From the NCBI RefSeq assembly GCF_039654945.1, contig NW_027361807.1:6386001-6450000 (forward strand): a stretch of 64,000 nt of DNA, given 5' to 3'. Origin of the DNA: Dendrobates tinctorius. Its lineage: Eukaryota. The position numbers and the translations under genes were made by a program. The notes beneath the pieces are model-generated. The model did not search any database. It was not told the DNA's origin and saw nothing but the letters and a program-made list of their open reading frames with translations. Of the stretch, positions 4,662 through 64,000 are shown piece after piece. Each line of letters begins with the position of its first letter. Position 1 is the first letter of the stretch.

Positions 4662-5463
4662 CTGTGTATACTCAAGTATAAGCCAACCAGAGTATAAGTC
4701 GAGGCACCTAATTTGGCCACGAAAAACTGGGAAAACTTATTGACTTGAGTATAAGCTGGGTATGCATAGTCCCCTCATCCCTATCCTTGTATGCATGGCT
4801 CCTCATCCTATCCTTGTATGCATGGCTCCTCATCCCTGACCTGGTATGCATGGCTCCTTATCCCCATCCTTGTATGCATGGATCCTCATTCCTGTATTGG
4901 TATGCATGGCTCCTCATCCTTATCTTTGTATGCATGGCTCCTTATTACCATCCTTGTTTGCATGGCTCCTCATCAATGTCCTGGTATGCATGGCCTCTTA
5001 TCCCTATCCTTTTATGCATGGTTCCTCATCCCTATACTTGAATGCATGGCCCCCTATGAGAAAAACATAAAAAACCTCCTACTTACCTTCTTATCGTTCT
5101 GGCTTCCAGCAGCTCCTGCGGCAGAATGATCACGTGACCCCGCTCATTGAGATAATGAATATTCACCTCTCTCCACTTGCTCAGCTGCAGGAGCTGCAGG
5201 AGCTGCTGGAAGCCGGAACAACAAGATGTTGCGAGGCAGCTCCGGCTGTAACTGCGCATGCGCTATGAGAGGAATGAATATTCATTGCCAGTGCAGTGAC
5301 TACTCATTTCTCTTTAGCAGCGGGCACAGTTACAGCCGCTGCTTCCTGACTCCTGTGACCCACTGCTCCGCCGCTCCCCCTCCCCCCACTGGCTTCTGGG
5401 ACAATGACTCGTGTATGAGAACAAACGTGCTGAAAAACTCAGTTTATACATGAGCATATACAG
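4662..5463. mobile_element. Non-autonomous TA-flanked DNA element (Tc1/mariner/pogo-type MITE) with an internal minisatellite
   Basis: TA|CTGTGTATACTCAAGTATAAGC ... GTTTATACATGAGCATATACAG|TA. Tandem ~29-bp unit (CATCCCTATCCTTGTATGCATGGCTCCT) at ~4760-5055. Confidence 0.75.
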
Positions 5464-7980: not shown

Positions 7981-9382
7981 CATAGAATCACAGAATCATA
8001 GAATCGTAGAGTTGGAAGGGACCTCCTGGGCCATCGGGTCCAACCCCCTGCGCAAAGCAGGATTCGCTATATCATCCCAGACAGATGTCTGTCCAGCCTC
8101 TGTTTGAAGACTTCCATTGAAGGAGAACTCACCACTTCTCGTGGCAGCCTGTTCCACTCATTGATCACTCTAACTGTCAAAAAGTTTTTTCTAATATCTA
8201 ATCTGTGTCTCCTCCCATTCAGTTTCATCCCATTGCTTCTAGTCTTTCCTTGTGCAAATGAGAATAAAGATGATCCTTCTACAATGTGAGAGCCCTTGAG
8301 ATATTTGTAGACAGCTTTTAAGTCTCCTCTCAGTTTTCTCTTTTGCAAGCTAAACATTCCCAAATCATGCAACCTTTCCTCATAAGACAGGGTTTGCAGA
8401 CCGGTCACCATTCTGATCGCTCTTTTCTGAACTTGCTCCAGTTTGTTGATGTCTTTTTTAAAATGTGGCTCCCAAAACTGGACACAGTATTCCAGATGAG
8501 GTCTGACCAAAGAGGAGTAGAGGGCAATAATGAATTCACGTGATCTAGACTGTATGCTTCTGTTAATACATCCTAGAATTGCATTTGCCTTTTTTGCTTC
8601 TGCATCACACTTTTGACTCATATTCAGTTTGTGATCTATTAGTATACCCAAGTCTTTTTCACATGTGCTGTTGCTTAGCCCTATTCCTCCCATTCTGTAT
8701 ATGCTTTTTTATTTTTATTGCCCAGATGTAGTACTTTGCATTTTTCCCTGTTAAATACCATTCTGTTAGTTGCTGCCCACTGCTCTAGTTTATATATTTT
8801 TGAATCCTCTCTCTTCTCTAGTATTAGCTATCCCTCCTAGCTTTGTGTCATCAGCAAATTTAATCAGTTTACCCGCAATTCCTTCATCTAAATCATTGAT
8901 AAAGATGTTGAACAATACAGGGCCCAGGACAGAGCCCTGTGGTACCCCACTCGAGACATTCTTCCAACTGGATGTGCAGCCATTTACGACCACTCTTTGG
9001 GTCCGATCACTAAGCCAGTTATGAATCCACCTAATATTTGCCTTGTCCATTCCATACCTAGTCATTTTTTCAATAAGGATTGTATGAGATACTTTGTCAA
9101 ATGCTTTGCTGAAGTCAAGATATACTATATCTACATCATTTCCCTGATCCACCCAATCAGTGATTCCGTCATAGAAGGAAATTAAGTTAGTCTGACATGA
9201 CTTATTAGTTACAAACCCATGCTGACTCTGTTTAATCACTTCATTCTTATCCAGGTACTGACATACATGTTGTTTAATAATTTGTTCAAAAGATCTTTCC
9301 TGGTATAGAAGTCAGTCTCACGGGCCTATAGTTGCCTGGGTCCACCTTCTTCCCCTTTTTGAAGATAGGAACAACATTTGCT
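7981..9382 (-). mobile_element. 5'-truncated CR1 LINE (RT C-terminal half plus 3' tail), frameshifted
   Basis: ORFs 8790-9239 ([29 protein letters not shown]) and 8067-8693 (RPHLEYCVQFW, WNRLP). (ATTCTRTG)n-type tail at ~7981-8010. Confidence 0.95.
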
Positions 9383-9384
9383 CA

Positions 9385-27346: not shown

Positions 27347-30137
27347 ATGCCACCCAAGAAAGCAACCAAGCGCAGCAGGAGAAGGCAGGAGACCACTGCA
27401 GCACCATCAGCACCACCACCACCCCAAATGGAGCAGCAAATGGAACATGCTGAGGAGGGGAGGCCAGCAGCAGATGAGAGACGGTAATTATCAAATCCCC
27501 CATTCCTCCAAACTAGGGCTATTGAATATCAAGATATTCATTGGCCCTTTGTTTCTCTTTATTCAACAGCCGCCCAATAGATGCAGCAGCAGCAGCAATG
27601 GCAGCAGGTGGAACACCACCCACAGGCATGGAGTGTGGCCACCAGGAAGACAGCACATCATCTTCTGGGAGCCCTCCCTCGCATCGTCAGCGTTTGACGG
27701 TAAGTTTTTATTTCCAAAATCCATCTTCTCTGTAATATATGTCTCTTCATTGCCTTTTATTTCAAAACAGGATTCACAAGATGAAGAGGAGCTCCCAGAA
27801 GAAGAAGGAAGGGGTGGACAGACACTTGGAGTGGGCTCACAATTGGTAAGTTTTTTGCATCAAACGCAGAAACACAACATCACACTACACACAACACATA
27901 GAAAACAATGTTCTGCAGACCACACACAGCAAACAAATGCCTACATCCAAAGACATAACATTTTTTGTTTTCTTCTCTAGTCTTCCCAATCTGGTGCTCG
28001 GCCAAGAGGTCCTCGCAGTGCCTCCCAGGGTCGTCGGCGACAGCAACGCGGCGGTCACCAGCGTGTAAGTATAAATATTTTTGCTTTGTTTTTTTGCACT
28101 TTTTATTTCATTTCTTTTGTGGAGGCTAATTATGTTATTTTTGTCTTTTTCTTTAACAGCCTTCACAGCGTGCTCCCGACTCTGACGGTGAGGATGGAGG
28201 ACTCGATGTGGACCACCTCATCGATCTCGTCAGAGAAAGGGAGCCGCTCTGGAATATGGCTGACCGCCGCCACGCTGACCTTATCGTTACCCGACGACTC
28301 TGGGAGGAAATCTGTTCGCTCCTTGTGGGCCGCTGGGAGGACCTCGATGTTCGGGCCCAGATTAAAGAGCGTAAGTATATACAGTACCGGTTGCTTGATG
28401 TAAACCAGTGTTTCCCGAACTCCAGTCCTCGTGGTCCCCACGGATCATGTGTTCAGGATTTCTATTTACTATGGAAATCCTGAAAACATGACCCCTGGGG
28501 ACCATGAGGACTGGAGTTTGGGAAACACTGATGTTGTATACTAACCACTTTGTCCTTTCTCGTTTCAGGGAACAGAATTGTGAATCGGTGGCGGTCTGTG
28601 AGGGATCGTTTCAAGAAGGAGTTCAATAAAGAGATGCGGGCCCCGAGTGGATCTGGAGGATGCAGGAGCAAGTACAAGTACGCAGAAGCCCTGTCGTTCC
28701 TCCGGGAAACAATGGTCACTAGAAGGTAAATATTACACACCACATGTGAAAAAAAATGTTAGATGTAAATTTTTTTTTTCAGCCAGGGCCATACCATGTC
28801 AGTATTTTAATTGTTTTTTTTTCTCTTTATTCCACAGCACGGTGAGCAGCACTCGGGAGCCTGCACGATTGGACCCTTCTGAGGCGATCCCTGAGGAGAC
28901 CGGCACCGAGGGACACTTCGACCGCCCCGGTACATCTGCACCTTCCCAGCCTTCCCACACATTCGACCCATCTGTCCCATCCACCAGCACAGGAGCATCG
29001 TGGCCGCCTACATTACATGAAGCTGCTGGTGAGGAGATCGCTTTCCCTTTACCCCACCCTTCTGCCCCTGCCACCTCTAGTACACCTGCGGGTACTGGGC
29101 GGCAGCGGCAGAGGGGTCAGGAAAAGACTTATGCGCCAGAGTTCTTGCATCTGAATGCATCTTTCCAGAACTGTCTAAAAGTCTTGTCAGAGCAAATCTC
29201 AGCAGGCTATCAGCAGATCAACTCCAGCATTCTGGAGGTGAAGATACTTCTGCAAACCATGCATTCAGAAGCAAGATCTTCGCCAAACCACACCTTTTTC
29301 AGGTCTGTTGTGGAGCGCATGGAAACGCTCTCTCCTGCCCAGCAGATGCATGTAATGCATTCATGCCACGCTGCTCTCCAGCAAGTTACCTCCCAACCTC
29401 CTCCTCCCACCACAGTAGTTCCTCCACCTGCACCCCCTCCAGCCACTTTCCATCCTCCCCCTCCTATTACATCTACACCCCCTCCAGCCACTTTCCATCC
29501 TCCCCCTCCTATTACATCTACACCCCCTCCAGCCACTTTCCATCCTCCCCCTCCTATTACATACCATCCACCTCCCCAGCACCATCCACCTCCCCAGCAC
29601 CAGCAACCTCCCCAGCACCAGCAACCTCCCCAGCACCAGCAACCTCCCCAGTACCAGCAACCTCCCCAGTACCAGCAACCTCCCCAGTACCAGCAACCTC
29701 CCCAGTACCAGCAACCTCCCCAGTACCTGCAAACTCCCCAGTACCAGCAACCTCCCCAGTACCAGACATCTCCCCACTTCCAGCAACCTGCCCCGTACCA
29801 GACATCTCCCCACTTCCAGCATCCTGCCTCGTACCAGACATCTCCCCACTTCCAGCAACCTGCCCCATACCAAACTCCTTCCCCATACAACTTGCCATCA
29901 ACATCTTCTGCTCCTACAGTCCCTGCCCAACCCTCCACTCCACCACCCACCACCTCTTCTGCTTCCCACATGTCCACCCATTCTGTAGTTTTTTTCCACA
30001 CCTTCACCTCTAACTGTTCCTTCCCCACCACGATCCCAGTCCTCTCTCCACACTCCCAGTGTCGAAGTGTCCCGCAGCCCCTCCAGCAGTATTTCCACCA
30101 CACACTACACAGATTTATAATGTGTGTATTTAAATAA
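27347..30137 (+). CDS. Harbinger Myb/SANT-like (MADF) DNA-binding protein with a BESS-like motif and a Pro/Gln-rich tail; 7 exons, ~697 aa
   Basis: Exons 27347-27483, 27570-27699, 27771-27845, 27981-28064, 28160-28370, 28569-28725 and 28838-30137, all GT-AG and phase-consistent (2094 nt). MADF: LIDLVREREPLWN...LWEEI...VNRWRSVRDRFKKE...YKYAEALSFL. BESS-like: NHTFFRSVVERMETLSPAQQMHV. AATAAA at 30133. Confidence 0.88.
28406..28530. mobile_element. 125-bp hAT-type MITE in intron 5 of the MADF gene
   Basis: CAGTGTTTCCCGAACTCCAGTCCTC ... GAGGACTGGAGTTTGGGAAACACTG. TSD is eroded (ATGTAAAC / ATGTTGTA). Confidence 0.8.
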
Positions 30138-31991: not shown

Positions 31992-33446
31992 CTTCGCCAG
32001 TAACTTGCTCTTCTCTCCAACCTGCACTTTCTCCTCTACAACCTGTCAAAGAAGGGCTGTAGGAACATGCTATATATAGTTTTCCAGTAGCCAATCCCGT
32101 TCGGAAGGCCACAAGGGTCAATTTTAAAAACCGGATCCGGCGTAATCCGTCGAAAAACGGATAGAAAAACGGATGAACCGGATGAGACGGATACGGTTTT
32201 GTCTGTCAAGAAAAAGACGGATCCGGCAGAAAACCGGATCCGTCACATCCGGTTTTACGAAACATTTGCCGGATCCGGCGTTCCGGCACGACGCCGGATC
32301 GCGCCTGACGCCGAAAACCTGATGTGTGAAAGTAGCCTTAAAAGTGTGCTCAGGAATGGCAGCAGGCAGGTGTGAGTGCATCTACACGCACTGTGAGGCG
32401 GAGACTCTTGGAGCAAGGCCTGGTCTCAAGGAGGGCAGCAAAGAAGCCACTTCTCTCCAGGAAAAACATCATGGACAGACTGATATTCTGCAAGAGGTAC
32501 AGGGAGTGGACTGCTGAGGACTGGGGTAAAGTCATTTTCTCTGATGAATCCCCTTTTCGATTGTTTGGGACATCTGGAAAACGGCTTATTCGGAGAAGAA
32601 CAGGTGAGCACTACCACCAGTCTTGTCTCATGCCAACTGTCAAGCATCCTGAAACCATTCATGTGTGGGGTTGCTTCTCAGCCAAGGGAATGGGCTCTCT
32701 CTCAGTCTTGCCTAAAAACACAGCCATGAATAAAGAATGGTACCGGAATGTCCTCCGAGAGCAACTTCTCCCAACCGTCCAAGAGCAGTTTGGCGATCAA
32801 CAATGCCTTTTTCAACATGATGGAGCACCTTGTCATAAAGCAAAGGTGATAACTAAATGGCTCAGGGAGCAAAACATAGAGATTTTGGGACCATGGCCTG
32901 GAAACTCCCCAGATCTTAATCCCATTGAGAACTTGTGGTCAATCATCAAGAGACGGGTGGACAAACAAAAACCTTCAAATTCAGACAAAATAAAAGCATT
33001 GATTTTGCAAGAATGCTGGACTGCTATCAGTCAGGATTTGATCCAGAAGTTGATTGAGAGCATGCCAGGGAGAATTGCTGAGGTCCTGAAGAAGAAGGGT
33101 CAACACTGCAAATATTGACTTGCTGCATTAACTCATTCTGTCAATATAACCTTTTGCTACTCATAATATGATTGCAATTATATTTCTGTATGTGATAAAA
33201 ACATCTGACAAACACACATAAAAACCAGAGGCCAGCAGATCTTGTGAAAATATAATATTTGTGTCATTCTCAAAACTTTTGGCCATGACTGTAGCCTGCA
33301 CCCTGGTGCTGCTGGTAGCGTGCAAAGGCTTGTAAGTGATGAGATCACAGTAGGGAAGGTGTCAGGGCCCCCGATCATGTGACCCCTGTCTCCTCCCCTC
33401 CTGTGACCTCATTACAGGTCCTGTGCGCACAGCACAGAGCAGCCAT

Positions 33447-35945
33447 GTATGTGGAGTGCGGCTCTGCGGGTGGAGGTCGGTGCCGGAGGCTCCATTATTC
33501 TCTATGTGGAGTGCGGCTCTGTGGGTGGAGGTCGGTGCCGGAGGCTCCATTATTCTCTATGTGGAGTGTGGCTCTGCGGGTGGAGGTCGGTGCCGGAGGC
33601 TCCATTATTCTCTATGTGGAGTGCGGCTCTGCGGGTGGAGGTCGGTGCCGGAGGCCCCATTATTCTCTATGTCGAGTGTGGGTCTGTGGGTGGAGGTAGG
33701 TGCTGGAGGCCCCATTATTCTCTATGTGGAGTGCGGCTCTGCGGGTGGAGGTCGGTGCTGGAGGCTCCATTATTCTCTATGTGGAGTGCGGCTCTGCGGG
33801 TGGAGGTCGGTGCCGGAGGCTCCATTATTCTCTATGTGGAGCGCGGCTCTGCGGGTGGAGGTCGGTGCCGGAGGCTCCATTATTCTCTATGTGGAGCGTG
33901 GCTCTGCGGGTGGAGGTCGGTGCTGGAGGCTCCATTATTCTTTATGTGGAATGCGGCTCTGCGGGTGGAGGTCGGTGCCGGAGGCTCCATTATTCTCTAT
34001 GTGGAGTGCGGGTGGAGGTCGGTGCCGGAGGCTCCATTATTCTCTATGTGGAGTGCGGCTCTGCGGGTGGAGGTCGGTGCCGGAGGCTCCATTATTCTCT
34101 ATGTGGAGTGCGGCTCTGCGGGTGGAGGTCGGTGCTGGAGGCTCCATTATTCTCTATGTGGAGTGCGGCTCTGCGGGTGGAGGTCGGTGCCGGAGGCTCC
34201 ATTATTCTCTATGTGGAGTGTGGCTCTGCGGGTGGAGGTCGGTGCTGGAGGCTCCATTATTCTTTATGTGGAATGTGGCTCTGCGGGTGGAGGTCGGTGC
34301 CGGAGGCTCCATTATACTCTATGTGGAGTGTGGCTCTGCGGGTGGAGGTCGGTGCCGGAGGCTCCATTATTCTCTATGTGGAGTGTGGCTCTGCGGGTGG
34401 AGGTCGGTGCCGGAGGCTCCATTATTCTCTATGTGGAGTGTGGCTCTGCGGGTGGAGGTCGGTGCCGGAGGCTCCATTATTCTCTATGTGGAGTGTGGCT
34501 CTGCGGGTGGAGGTCGGTGCCGGAGGCCCCATTATTCTCTATGTGGAGTGCGGCTCTGCGGGTGGAGGTTGGTGCCGGAGGCTCCATTATTCTCTAGGTG
34601 GATTGCGGCTCTGCGGGTGGAGGTCGGTGCCGGAGGCTCCATAATTCTCTATGTGGAGTGTGGCTCTGCGGGTGGAGGTCGGTGCCGGAGGCTCCATTAT
34701 TCTCTATGTGGAGTGCGGCTCTGCGGGTGGAGGTCGGTGCTGGAGGCTCCATTATTCTCTATGTGGAGTGCGGCTCTGCGGGTGGAGGTCGGTGCCGGAG
34801 GCTCCATTATTCTCTATGTGGAGTGTGGCTCTGCGGGTGGAGGTCGGTGCTGGAGGCTCCATTATTCTTTATGTGGAGTGTGGCTCTGCGGGTGGAGGTC
34901 GGTGCCGGAGGCTCCATTATTCTCTATGTGGAGTGTGGCTCTGCGGGTGGAGGTCGGTGCCGGAGGCTCCATTATTCTCTATGTGGAGTGTGGCTCTAAG
35001 TGGAGGTCGGTGCTGGAGGCTCCATTATTCTCTATGTGGAGTGTGGCTCTGCGGGTCCGTGCCGGAGGCTCCATTATTCTCTATGTGGAGTGCGGCTCTG
35101 CGGGTGGAGGTCAGTGCTGGAGGCTCCTTTATTCTCTATGTGGAGTGCGGCTCTGGGGGTGGAGGTCGGTGCCGGAGGCTCCATTATTCTCTGTGGATTG
35201 TGGCTTTGCGGGTGGAGGTCGGTGCTGGAGGCTCCATTGTTCTCTATGTGGATTGTGGCTCTGCGGGTGGAGGTCGGTGCTGGAGGCTCCATTATTCTCT
35301 ATGTGGAGTGCGGCTCTGGGGGTGGAGGTCGGTGCCGGAGGCTCCATTATTCTCTGTGGATTGTGGATTTGCGGGTTGAGGTCGGTGCTGGAGGCTCCAT
35401 TATTCTCTATGTGGAGTGCGGCTCTGCGAGTGGAGGTCGGTGCTGGAGGCTCCATTATTCTCTATGTGGATTGTGGCTCTGCAGGTGGAGGTCGGTGCCG
35501 GAGGCTCAATTATTCTCTATGTGGAGTGTGGCTCTGCGAGTGGAGGTCGGTGCTGGAGGCTCCATTATTCTTTATGTGGAGTGCGGCTCTGCAGGTGGAG
35601 GTCGGTGCCGGAGGCTCCATTATACTCTATGTGGAGTGCGGCTCTGCGAGTGGAGGTCGGTGCTGGAGGCTCCATTATTCTCTATGTGGAGTGTGGTTCT
35701 GTGGGTGGAGGTCGGTGCATGAGGCTCCATTATTTTCTATGTGGTGTGTGGCTCTGCGGGTGGAGGTCGGTGCCGGAGGCTCCATTATTCTCTATGTGGA
35801 GTGCGGCTCTGCGGGTGGAGGTCAGTGCTGGAGGCTCCATTATTCTCTATGTGGAGTGCGGCTCTGCGGGTGGAGGTCGGTGCTGGAGGCTCCATTATTC
35901 TCTATGTGGAATGCGGCTCTGCGGGTGGAGGTCGGTGCTGGAGTA
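33447..35945. repeat. 55-bp minisatellite, roughly 45 copies
   Basis: Unit GTGGAGTGCGGCTCTGCGGGTGGAGGTCGGTGCCGGAGGCTCCATTATTCTCTAT (period 33451 to 33506). Confidence 0.97.
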
Positions 35946-62500: not shown

Positions 62501-63054
62501 CACTCCATGTCATCTTGGACTGGGGAATTCACGATTTGACTTGATAACTCAGGCATGGTATGATAGAAAGAGCTACATGGACTAATGTGAAGTGTGGCCT
62601 GCTGCATCATTCACTTTTGGTGGGGGTGAAGGAAACAAGGAAAGGGGTTCTTCCTGACCAGGAGCCAGCATTTGACGACTCAGTGCTTGCATTTTTTGAA
62701 ACTTCAGAAGAGGAGGGCATATTTGCTGGAGTCTGTTTCGGCAATGTAAGCCAAAATCAGTTCCTGATGCTCCGGCTTTAAAAGCGGTTAACCTACTCCC
62801 AGAAAAGGTAGCCTTCCAGGCGTTCTGGAGCCAGATGGTGACGCAGGCTCAACATCTCCTGCCTTAGCTGCTATTGTGCTTTTGCCACTACTAGAAGATG
62901 CACCACCACCATCAGCACCAGCTGGCCCCCCAATGCCCACGTCCGCGGCCTCTTCCACCAAACTTCAAAATTTTGCAGAAAATGAACCCAAAATAACATC
63001 AGATATATGGTACTGTATCAGAAGCGAACAGCTCTATACAGTCGAAGGATAATT

Positions 63055-63740
63055 GTAGCAGGAGGATCAGGAGGCAGTCAGCACCCATACTTCTCAGTAA
63101 CCAGTACCAGGCTCTTACACAGGAGAGCGATGAAGAAATACATCAGGATAAGACTTTGCCCACAAACAGCAACCTTGTACGCCTTCAGAGTCCTCCTGGA
63201 TGGAGAAAGAAAAATGTTGTGAAGAAGAAACGGAGAGTGGTGGTCATGGGGGATTCCCTGTTGAGAGGAACAGAGGCCGCTATCTGCAGACCGGATATAA
63301 CTTCAAGAGAAATGTGCTGTCTTCCAGGTGCAAAAATTAAAGATGTGACTGACAGGATATCAGGACTCTTCAGACCTACAGATGACTACCCATTCCTGCT
63401 ACTACATGTGGGGACAAATGACACTGCAAGAAACGACCTGGAAACCATCTGCAGAGACTTTGAAGACTTAGGCAAGAAAGTGAAAGAACTGGGAGCGCAG
63501 GTGGTCTTCTCTTCCATCCTCCCAGTGGATGGCCATGGAACAAGGAGATGGAATAAGATTCTGCAGGTGAACAACTGGCTACGTCGATGGTGCCGTCAGC
63601 AACAATTTGGATTTATGGATCACGGAGTGAATTACTTTTATGATGGACTACTTGCTAGAGATGGGGTGCACCTTACGAAGACTGGAAAACATGTATTTGG
63701 AAGTCGCCTTGCTACACTTGTAAGGAGAGCTTTAAACTAG
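63055..63740 (+). CDS. CR1 LINE ORF1 C-terminal part, SGNH/GDSL esterase domain (5' boundary approximate)
   Basis: LLSNQYQAL upstream in frame; VVVMGDSLLRG, CCLPGAKI, LHVGTND, DGVHL, ending RRALN*. Confidence 0.92.
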
Positions 63741-64000
63741 AACAACATGGGAAGGGAAGCAAAAGACCAGAAAAAGCCATACATCTGAAAAATGCTATTG
63801 AGAACTCTGCTATTAGAAGTGGAAAGGAAGAACAAAGACAAAACAATCTAAATAATAAAAATATTGGAGAAAGAGAAACCAATCACAAACTAAAATGTTT
63901 CTATACTAATGCACAAAGCATGGGCAACAAACAAGGAGAATTGGAACTACTAACACAGGAAAAGAAATATGATGTCATTGGAATCACTGAAACTTGGAGG
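63737..64000 (+). CDS. CR1 LINE ORF2 N-terminus (APE-like endonuclease), runs off the window
   Basis: In the -1 frame relative to ORF1: LKCFYTNAQSMGNKQGELELLTQEKKYDVIGITETW. Confidence 0.9.

What the first reader, a model, noticed from the sequence alone, without database searches (positions are those of the whole stretch)
63659..63925. CR1 ORF1/ORF2 junction is an in-phase U_UUA_AAC slippery site: candidate programmed -1 ribosomal frameshift making an esterase-EN-RT fusion
Seen: ORF1 ends GCT TTA AAC TAG, so 63731-63737 is T_TTA_AAC in exact X_XXY_YYZ phase, immediately followed by the stop. The -1 frame (TTT AAA CTA GAA...) is the ORF2 frame. It is open from 63659 to the window end, and its first ATG (63920) lies after the conserved APE motif-I Asn (YTNAQS), so initiation there would clip the endonuclease. 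Known: UUUAAAC is the canonical coronavirus -1 frameshift heptamer, and LINE ORF2 translation is usually explained by termination-reinitiation (L1). Inference: this CR1 may make ORF2 as a Gag-Pol-like ORF1-ORF2 fusion. I see no obvious downstream pseudoknot (the region is A-rich), so the adjacent stop may be the stimulator. I cannot confirm whether this has been reported before.
Basis: partly seen in the sequence, partly recalled or inferred. Interest (0 to 1): 0.8.

Follow-up and report, generated by a model that had tools for sequence, protein, structure and literature searches.

The report
Conserved frameshift signal in CR1 retrotransposons
The two genes of this frog CR1 jumping-gene copy meet at a classic ribosome-slipping signal (UUUAAAC followed by a stop) that is conserved letter for letter in CR1 elements of frogs, turtles, lizards, snakes, crocodilians and birds, so these elements very probably make their copying enzyme as a fusion protein by programmed -1 frameshifting.

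Summary
ORF1 (esterase) ends GCT TTA AAC TAG, so T_TTA_AAC (63731-63737) is in slip-site phase. ORF2 (endonuclease/RT) is in the -1 frame, and its first AUG (63920) lies after the endonuclease motif-I Asn.

The window copy is a dead, 5'-truncated insert that starts at 63057.
- Junctions from 13 diverged CR1 lineages, plus four sub-family representatives from a metagenome, all carry TTTAAAC followed directly by a stop, with ORF2 in the -1 frame.
- Nine ORF1s share 39 invariant amino-acid columns with degenerate codons. Only the last three (GCT, TTA, AAC) use a single codon.
- The stop codon and the preceding codon vary. In a distant clade the residue before Leu-Asn is S, Y, C or F (TNT codons), so only the slip-site T is kept.
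- No conserved AUG precedes the endonuclease. The -1 frame is closed 3-81 nt upstream of the heptamer.

No conserved RNA structure follows the heptamer. The only other invariant element is a G tract 10-11 nt downstream.

Programmed -1 frameshifting is the best explanation (about 0.8), but no experiment shows it. I found no prior report in the searchable literature, and the 1993-2003 CR1 papers are not held. The scan noted the same motif on another piece of this genome (s1-389158).

The parts
63057..64000 (+). 5'-truncated CR1 LINE copy; it runs off the window end
   Evidence: blastn to the full-length element L001:4280-5220, 97.2% identity, homology starts at 63057; loose ends at 63057 in thousands of contigs
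63057..63740 (+). Remnant of ORF1 (SGNH/GDSL esterase domain), ending ...VRRALN-TAG
63731..63737 (+). Slip-site heptamer T_TTA_AAC, in phase with ORF1
   Evidence: invariant in 17 aligned junctions; only single-codon columns in the ORF1 codon control; no variant at 5% share or more among the contigs laid
63738..63740 (+). ORF1 stop codon (TAG) directly after the heptamer
   Evidence: the position is invariant while the identity varies (TAG/TGA/TAA) across lineages
63749..63756 (+). Conserved G tract (GGGAAGGG) starting 11 nt after the heptamer; candidate linear stimulator
   Evidence: GGG is invariant or nearly so in alignment A2; codon 7 of the ORF2 frame is GGG in 15 of 17 junctions against a 0.28 baseline; no pairing partner found
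63659..64000 (+). -1 frame (ORF2 frame), open from a stop at 63656-63658 to the window end; the linker and the start of the APE endonuclease
   Evidence: the same frame runs 973 aa (APE + RT) in the full-length relative L001
63902..63922 (+). Endonuclease motif I (YTNAQS) followed by the first in-frame AUG of ORF2 (63920)

Best explanation
The ORF1/ORF2 junction of CR1-type LINEs is a programmed -1 ribosomal frameshift site. Most ribosomes translating ORF1 terminate at the stop directly after U_UUA_AAC and release the esterase-type ORF1p. A minority slip back one base on the heptamer. This happens either by tandem slippage of tRNA-Leu and tRNA-Asn, or by P-site slippage of tRNA-Asn while the stop occupies the A site. 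Those ribosomes continue in the ORF2 frame and make an ORF1p-endonuclease-RT fusion whose junction peptide in the frog family is ...RALN-LEQHGK.... This would set a high ORF1p:ORF2p ratio, as Gag:Gag-Pol frameshifting does in retroviruses, and would tether ORF2p to ORF1p on its own RNA. The heptamer, the adjacent stop and a G tract 10-11 nt downstream form the conserved signal. No conserved hairpin or pseudoknot is needed or seen. The conservation and the geometry are shown here. The slipping itself, its efficiency, and the roles of the stop and the G tract are inferred. The window's own copy is a dead 5'-truncated insert that merely preserves the signal of its master element.
For: (1) Junction DNA came from 13 diverged lineages: frog L001; turtles L002, L007, L010; lizard L003; snake L009; alligator L004; birds L005/L006 and L008; a metagenome contig L011; and distant-clade loci L080, L092-L094 and L095. 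All read NNT TTA AAC + stop with ORF2 in the -1 frame. ORF2 is intact (961-978 aa) in L001, L003, L005/6, L010 and L092-94. (2) Codon control: 9 ORF1s at roughly 40-55% amino-acid identity share 40 invariant residue columns. All 36 other degenerate columns use 2-5 codons. Only the last three use one codon each (GCT, TTA, AAC), which gives 3/3 against 0/36, P about 1e-4. Family-wide usage is GCT/Ala 0.22, TTA/Leu 0.07, AAC/Asn 0.61. (3) The flanks vary: the stop is TAG, TGA or TAA, and the codon two before the heptamer's Leu is AGA, AGG, CGG or GTG. In the distant clade 106 of 120 ORF1 homologues end x-[S/Y/C/F]-L-N, with TCT, TAT and TGT verified in DNA. The residue is therefore free, but the third-base T that forms the X of the slip site is kept. 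(4) A sample not conditioned on the C-terminus (query trimmed by about 14 aa) gave 62 mostly decayed bird-type copies. Of these, 51 keep TTTAAAC at the expected offset, 9 carry single-base changes and 2 carry a deletion. (5) The -1 frame is closed by a stop only 3-81 nt upstream of the heptamer (3 nt in swift, 6 nt in L092), so entry into ORF2 must occur at or after the heptamer. There is no AUG between the heptamer and the endonuclease Asn in 7 of 11 lineages. (6) In a 117-nt alignment of 17 junctions, the only invariant columns are TTTAAACT and a G of the G tract 11-13 nt downstream. (7) About 85 of 120 ORF1 homologues from frogs, turtles, squamates, crocodilians and birds end ...RALN. (8) U_UUA_AAC is an established efficient eukaryotic -1 slip site (coronaviruses; general knowledge, and PMC5009743).
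Against: There is no experimental evidence: no fusion protein, no transframe peptide, no reporter assay. No conserved RNA structure follows the site: RNAalifold finds no pairs, single-sequence MFE z-scores run from -1.6 to +1.5, and the G tract has no preferred partner within 150 nt (mean z -0.04). Unstimulated heptamers usually shift at only about 1% or less. The G tract lies further away (10-11 nt) than a classic stimulator (5-9 nt). Other LINEs (L1, SART1) use termination-reinitiation for ORF2 (PMC3894237, PMC2881922). The zebrafish L2-clade esterase ORF1p appears to end differently, so the signal is not universal among esterase-bearing LINEs.
Confidence: 0.8

Rival explanations
1. ORF2 is translated by termination-reinitiation or another unconventional, AUG-independent initiation, as proposed for L1 and SART1. 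Under this reading the conserved TTTAAAC-stop-N7-GGGG block is the reinitiation signal (for example by tethering the post-termination 40S subunit) rather than a slip site.
For: Termination-coupled ORF2 translation is the accepted model for other LINEs (PMC3894237, PMC2881922, PMC3708506). The stop is always directly at the motif. No strong frameshift-stimulating structure is present. The G tract loosely resembles the UGGGA core of calicivirus TURBS (my recollection).
Against: It does not explain why the conserved block is a perfect X_XXY_YYZ heptamer in exact phase with ORF1, nor why only the third base of the preceding codon is kept. There is no AUG overlapping or near the stop, and no conserved near-cognate start. 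TURBS elements lie upstream of the stop, not downstream.
Confidence: 0.12
2. The block is conserved for a reason unrelated to ORF2 translation, such as an RNA element for packaging or ORF2p recognition, or a constraint on the ORF1p C-terminus together with the ORF2p N-terminus. ORF2 would then be expressed from a separate or internal initiation event.
For: The Leu-Asn end of ORF1p and the FKL start of the ORF2 frame are both conserved as peptides. Some lineages do have AUGs in the linker.
Against: Peptide constraint cannot fix synonymous positions: TTA is 7% of Leu codons and GCT is 22% of Ala codons. The -1 frame is closed a few codons upstream, so there is no dual-coding overlap to constrain. 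The linker AUGs are not conserved and are absent from 7 of 11 lineages.
Confidence: 0.06
3. Chance: the heptamer at the junction is a coincidence of one young frog family.
For: TTTAAAC is common (11 in the window, 10.6 expected). Within the frog family, 10 invariant bases are unremarkable when about 5% of sites vary.
Against: The heptamer is identical, in the same phase, in lineages separated by more than 300 million years and saturated at every other synonymous site.
Confidence: 0.01

Closest known systems
Coronavirus/arterivirus ORF1a/1b -1 frameshift signal (U_UUA_AAC + pseudoknot)
   Same: It has the identical heptamer in the identical phase. The downstream ORF encodes the polymerase and is made only as a fusion.
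   Different: The viral signal depends on a pseudoknot 5-7 nt downstream and has no adjacent stop. The CR1 site has no conserved structure, has a stop directly after the heptamer, and has a G tract at 10-11 nt.
Gag-Pol -1 frameshifting of retroviruses and LTR retrotransposons (e.g. Rous sarcoma virus A_AAU_UUA followed by the gag UAG; recalled from memory)
   Same: A structural or RNA-associated protein and the RT are made from one RNA in a fixed ratio. In RSV the upstream ORF's stop directly follows the heptamer, and G-rich sequence follows the stop.
   Different: CR1 is a non-LTR element with no Gag, protease or integrase. The review literature I could read does not credit any LINE with frameshift-made ORF2 (PMC3894237, PMC2881922, PMC5009743).
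Luteovirus/dianthovirus replicase frameshift (BYDV G_GGU_UUU_UAG, RCNMV G_GAU_UUU_UAG; recalled from memory)
   Same: The slip site is immediately followed by the ORF1 stop codon, and the polymerase is made as a low-abundance fusion.
   Different: Those sites need an adjacent bulged stem-loop and, in BYDV, a long-range kissing interaction. Nothing comparable was detected here within 150 nt.
Protein-stimulated frameshifting in arteriviruses (nsp1beta/PCBP on a C-rich motif about 11 nt downstream) and cardioviruses (2A on a stem-loop 13-14 nt downstream)
   Same: A conserved element lies more than 10 nt 3' of the slip site. This is the distance class that PMC5009743 associates with trans-acting factors or linear RNA stimulators.
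   Different: The CR1 element is a G tract, not a C-rich motif or a stem-loop, and no binding protein is known. This comparison is a hypothesis only.
L1 and SART1 ORF2 translation (termination-reinitiation; UAAUG coupling)
   Same: Both are bicistronic LINE RNAs, ORF2 depends on ORF1 translation, and ORF2p is scarce.
   Different: L1 has an inter-ORF spacer and makes separate proteins, and SART1 has an overlapping UAAUG. CR1 has neither a spacer AUG nor UAAUG, but does have an in-phase slip site.

Membership tests
Canonical eukaryotic -1 programmed ribosomal frameshift signal | X_XXY_YYZ heptamer in phase with the upstream ORF | tested here: met
   T_TTA_AAC at 63731-63737 is in ORF1 phase, and the same holds in all 17 junctions aligned
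Canonical eukaryotic -1 programmed ribosomal frameshift signal | The downstream ORF is in the -1 frame, overlaps only around the heptamer, and lacks its own conserved start | tested here: met
   ORF2 is -1 in every lineage. The -1 frame opens 3-81 nt before the heptamer. There are no AUGs before the endonuclease Asn in 7 of 11 lineages
Canonical eukaryotic -1 programmed ribosomal frameshift signal | The heptamer is conserved at synonymous positions among diverged relatives | tested here: met
   GCT, TTA and AAC are the only single-codon columns among 39 degenerate invariant columns. Only the T is kept when the preceding residue changes
Canonical eukaryotic -1 programmed ribosomal frameshift signal | A stimulatory hairpin or pseudoknot 5-9 nt downstream | tested here: not met
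   There are no consensus pairs, MFE z-scores centre on 0, and the G tract has no partner. Pseudoknots and long-range pairings were not searched exhaustively
Canonical eukaryotic -1 programmed ribosomal frameshift signal | A demonstrated transframe product | not testable with these tools
   This needs a reporter assay, an immunoblot, mass spectrometry or ribosome profiling
CR1-clade LINE (esterase-type ORF1 + APE/RT ORF2) | ORF1 encodes an SGNH/GDSL esterase domain | tested here: met
   Pfam PF13472 E 2e-7, 32.1 bits against a cut-off of 32.9. PDB 4c1b ZfL2-1 ORF1p esterase E 3e-22. 129 homologues, many named SGNH hydrolase-type esterase
CR1-clade LINE (esterase-type ORF1 + APE/RT ORF2) | ORF2 encodes an APE endonuclease followed by a reverse transcriptase | tested here: met
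   The full-length relative L001 has Exo_endo_phos E 7e-16 and RVT_1 E 1e-35. The window holds only the first 90 codons
CR1-clade LINE (esterase-type ORF1 + APE/RT ORF2) | Placement in the CR1 clade by RT phylogeny; 3' UTR hairpin and microsatellite tail | not tested
   No reference TE library is available here. The assignment rests on ORF1 and ORF2 homologues from bird, turtle and crocodilian CR1-rich genomes
Termination-reinitiation signals (UAAUG/AUGA overlap; TURBS) | The restart AUG overlaps or lies within a few nt of the upstream stop | tested here: not met
   The junction reads AAC TAG AAC AAC ATG, and that ATG is in the ORF1 frame and is not conserved (A>G at 63747 in nearly all contigs of run X17, organism C). 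No ORF2-frame AUG lies near the stop

The most novel reading that the evidence does not exclude
CR1-group LINEs, the dominant retrotransposons of most non-mammalian vertebrates, express ORF2 solely as an ORF1-EN-RT fusion through a -1 frameshift signal more than 350 million years old. The signal works without RNA structure. The invariant G tract 10-11 nt downstream would be a linear, protein-dependent stimulator bound by a host G-tract-binding protein or by ORF1p itself, which would give autoregulated ORF1p:ORF2p stoichiometry. That would be the first frameshift-dependent LINE and a new class of vertebrate frameshift stimulator.
Probability: 0.2. Interest if true: 0.92.

Novelty: new variant of a known kind. 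Interest (0 to 1): 0.8.

Why it matters
How LINEs translate ORF2 is an acknowledged open question; a dedicated review calls it "an interesting-and important-question" and never mentions frameshifting (PMC3894237). CR1-group elements are the main retrotransposons of birds, reptiles and many amphibians, yet they have no established expression model.

A deeply conserved, in-phase U_UUA_AAC at every ORF1/ORF2 junction makes the question directly testable with a 150-nt reporter. If confirmed, it would have several consequences:
- It would extend the Gag-Pol frameshift strategy from retroviruses and LTR elements to non-LTR elements.
- It would predict a roughly 150-kDa esterase-EN-RT fusion as the active enzyme, and so change how CR1 ORF2 is annotated. 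Gene callers currently start ORF2 at arbitrary downstream codons.
- It would add an abundant, structure-less cellular frameshift signal with an unexplained G-tract element to the small list of vertebrate examples.
- It gives a simple criterion (heptamer intact, ORF2 in -1 phase) for scoring potentially active CR1 copies.

Tried and rejected
- A downstream stimulatory structure was sought in three ways, and none found one. Single-sequence folding of 90 nt after the heptamer in 17 lineages gave z-scores from -1.6 to +1.5. RNAalifold on the 17-sequence alignment gave 0 pairs. A duplex search between the G tract and the next 150 nt, compared with shuffles, gave mean z -0.04. A general G-quadruplex was rejected by eye, because the frog and the distant clade have only one or two G runs.
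- No other junction copy lies in the window. Only a 3' CR1 fragment was found, at 7987-9383 on the minus strand.
- The within-family read evidence shows no variant at 5% share or more at 63723-63745. I judged this uninformative on its own, because only about 5% of sites vary in this young family.
The papers most likely to have noted it are not held: Haas 1997 and 2001, Kajikawa 1997, Kapitonov and Jurka 2003, Burch 1993. Prior mention therefore cannot be excluded.
- The large representative-protein search was not run, because the claim does not rest on the absence of relatives.

Full report
**What is in the window**

The sequence at 63720-63760 reads ...AGG AGA GCT TTA AAC TAG AAC AAC ATG GGA AGG G....
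- The ORF ending at 63740 is a GDSL/SGNH esterase (Pfam PF13472, E 2e-7, just under the curated cut-off). The full-length relative matches the crystallised ZfL2-1 ORF1p esterase, PDB 4c1b, at E 3e-22.
- TTTAAAC occupies 63731-63737 in X_XXY_YYZ phase, and the stop follows directly.
- The -1 frame is open from 63659 to the window end. It encodes FKLEQHGKG...CFYTNAQSMGNKQ..., the start of an APE endonuclease.
- Its first AUG (63920) lies after the motif-I Asn. In the full-length relative, the Pfam Exo_endo_phos match reaches that Met only at profile position 13.
- The heptamer as such is common: 11 in the window against 10.6 expected. Only its position and its conservation can carry the argument.

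**Status of this copy**

- The best ORF1 homologue (97% identity) is annotated Dendrobates tinctorius.
- A full-length element from that assembly (L001) has a 320-aa ORF1 with an AUG and a 973-aa -1-frame ORF2 with APE and RT domains.
- The window copy aligns to L001:4280-5220 at 97.2%, and the homology starts abruptly at 63057.
- Contigs from four sequencing runs show thousands of copies that continue upstream of 63057 with other sequence.
- The window therefore holds a dead, 5'-truncated insert of a very abundant, young family. Its junction reflects the master element.
- Among the contigs laid, no variant reaches 5% share between 63723 and 63745. With only about 5% of sites variable, this is weak evidence by itself.
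- The scan's index lists the same motif on another piece of this genome (s1-389158).

**Comparative test**

- About 85 of 120 ORF1 homologues from frogs, turtles, lizards, snakes, crocodilians and birds end in ...RALN.
- I fetched the DNA of ten such lineages, at 41-97% ORF1 identity to the query. All read GCT TTA AAC + stop with ORF2 in the -1 frame. ORF2 is intact (967-978 aa) in frog, lizard, swift and softshell turtle.
- The flanks vary. The stop is TAG, TGA or TAA, and the Arg/Val codon before Ala is AGA, AGG, CGG or GTG.
- Codon control: nine ORF1s share 40 invariant amino-acid columns. Every one of the other 36 degenerate columns uses two to five codons, so synonymous sites are saturated. 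The last three columns use a single codon each: GCT, TTA, AAC. That is 3/3 against 0/36, about 1e-4 by exact test.
- TTA is only 7% of Leu codons and GCT only 22% of Ala codons in these ORF1s.

**A sample not conditioned on the C-terminus**

- A metagenome scan used an ORF1 alignment trimmed of its last 14 residues or so. It returned 80 loci, almost all host contamination from one sample with bird-type CR1s.
- Of 62 loci with sequence beyond the match (a few are duplicates), 51 have TTTAAAC at the expected offset. Nine differ by one base and two carry a deletion, as expected for decayed copies.
- Positions 1-2 of the preceding codon had changed in 13 copies, but its third-base T was kept.

**A distant clade**

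- One locus (L080, 33% ORF1 identity) led to a large clade in an unnamed ENA assembly. Its ORF2 is 40% identical to the frog ORF2.
- There, 106 of 120 ORF1 proteins end x-[S/Y/C/F]-L-N.
- The DNA reads TCT, TAT or TGT, then TTA AAC TAG. ORF2 is in the -1 frame and intact at 961 aa in three identical copies.
- The amino acid before Leu-Asn is thus free, but the T that forms the first letter of the slip site is not. The constraint acts on the nucleotides of the heptamer, not on the protein.

**Geometry**

- The -1 frame is closed by a stop 3-81 nt upstream of the heptamer: 3 nt in the swift, 6 nt in L092, 15 nt in turtles.
- Seven of eleven lineages have no AUG between the heptamer and the endonuclease Asn, and the AUGs that do occur are not conserved.
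- Ribosomes must therefore enter the ORF2 frame within a few codons that contain the heptamer, without a conserved start codon.

**Downstream context**

- In a 117-nt alignment of 17 junctions, the only invariant columns are TTTAAACT and a G within a G tract 11-13 nt further on. Two neighbouring Gs are nearly invariant.
- Codon 7 of the ORF2 frame is GGG in 15 of 17 junctions, against 28% GGG among Gly codons elsewhere in ORF2. This element too is conserved as RNA.
- I found no structure. RNAalifold predicts no pairs, MFE z-scores scatter around zero, and the G tract has no better-than-random partner within 150 nt.
- Pseudoknots and long-range pairings were not exhaustively searched.
- The spacing of 10-11 nt is longer than for classic stimulators. 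It falls in the class that the Atkins et al. review links to linear or protein-bound stimulators (PMC5009743). This is a lead, not a finding.

**Interpretation**

- The simplest reading is programmed -1 frameshifting at U_UUA_AAC, yielding an ORF1p-EN-RT fusion. I give it about 0.8.
- Tandem slippage, or P-site slippage with the stop in the A site, would give the same junction peptide (...ALN-LEQ... in the frog).
- Low efficiency would suffice, since LINE ORF2p is needed in small amounts.
- The main rival is a termination-reinitiation signal, as in L1 and SART1. It does not explain the exact slip-site pattern and phase, and it lacks any nearby AUG (about 0.12).
- Other nucleotide-level functions, or peptide constraint, are less likely (about 0.06).
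- Chance is excluded.

**Novelty**

- Ten literature searches found no paper that combines CR1 with a slippery site, TTTAAAC or ribosomal frameshifting of ORF2.
- The following do not mention it: the 2026 survey of CR1-group elements (PMC13343379), Suh et al. 2014 (PMC4316615), the ORF1 studies (PMC4120745; PMC3905857), two reviews of non-LTR protein biogenesis (PMC3894237, PMC2881922), and the held part (first 300,000 characters) of the 2016 recoding review (PMC5009743).
- The original CR1 papers of 1993-2003 are not held, so an early remark cannot be excluded.
- I class the finding as a new variant of a known kind. The mechanism and the heptamer are known. The host (a non-LTR retrotransposon clade) is new, and the context (adjacent stop, G tract, no structure) is unusual.

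Noticed in passing
window 7987-9383 (-): A second CR1 fragment of the same family: the 3' part of ORF2, 95.7% identical to L001. It is a 5'-truncated insert on the minus strand.
   Followed up: partly
window about 63000-63056: A different high-copy repeat abuts the CR1 copy. Many contigs match up to 63039-63052 and then continue with other sequence (...AAATCTCCGTATATAT...). The CR1 copy therefore inserted into, or next to, another repeat (loose ends).
   Followed up: no
L002:19066-19073, L010:5092-5099, L007 and L003 at the equivalent place: A near-consensus 5' splice-donor sequence (AGGTAAGT or AGGTAAT or AGGTAGG) lies about 33 nt after the heptamer in the turtle and lizard CR1 lineages. It is absent from the frog. 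It could be chance, shared descent or a real donor.
   Followed up: no
window 63747: The ORF1-frame ATG just after the stop (63747-63749) is not conserved. Nearly all contigs of run X17 (organism C) have G at 63747.
   Followed up: no
window 33336-35324 and beyond; 29490-29921; 4754-5081: There are tandem arrays of 55-bp units (44 copies), 18-bp units (17 copies) and 28-bp units (9 copies).
   Followed up: no
proteins P0028, P0126, P0092: Some CR1 ORF1 esterases are filed in public databases under bacterial names (Klebsiella pneumoniae; a Gammaproteobacteria MAG) or as 'Replicase polyprotein 1a' (Varanus komodoensis). These are probably contamination or mis-annotation.
   Followed up: no
L092, L093, L094 (ENA ERZ21939214): Fifteen contigs carry an identical 429-aa ORF1, and the three places fetched (L092-L094) are followed by an intact 961-aa ORF2. 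This looks like a very young, apparently active CR1-like family in an unidentified host. The gene caller starts ORF2 3 nt after the ORF1 stop.
   Followed up: partly
PDB 4c1b: The zebrafish ZfL2-1 ORF1p esterase chain ends two residues after the position aligned to ...LVR. It does not align to an ...RALN end, so the L2 clade may lack the signal.
   Followed up: no
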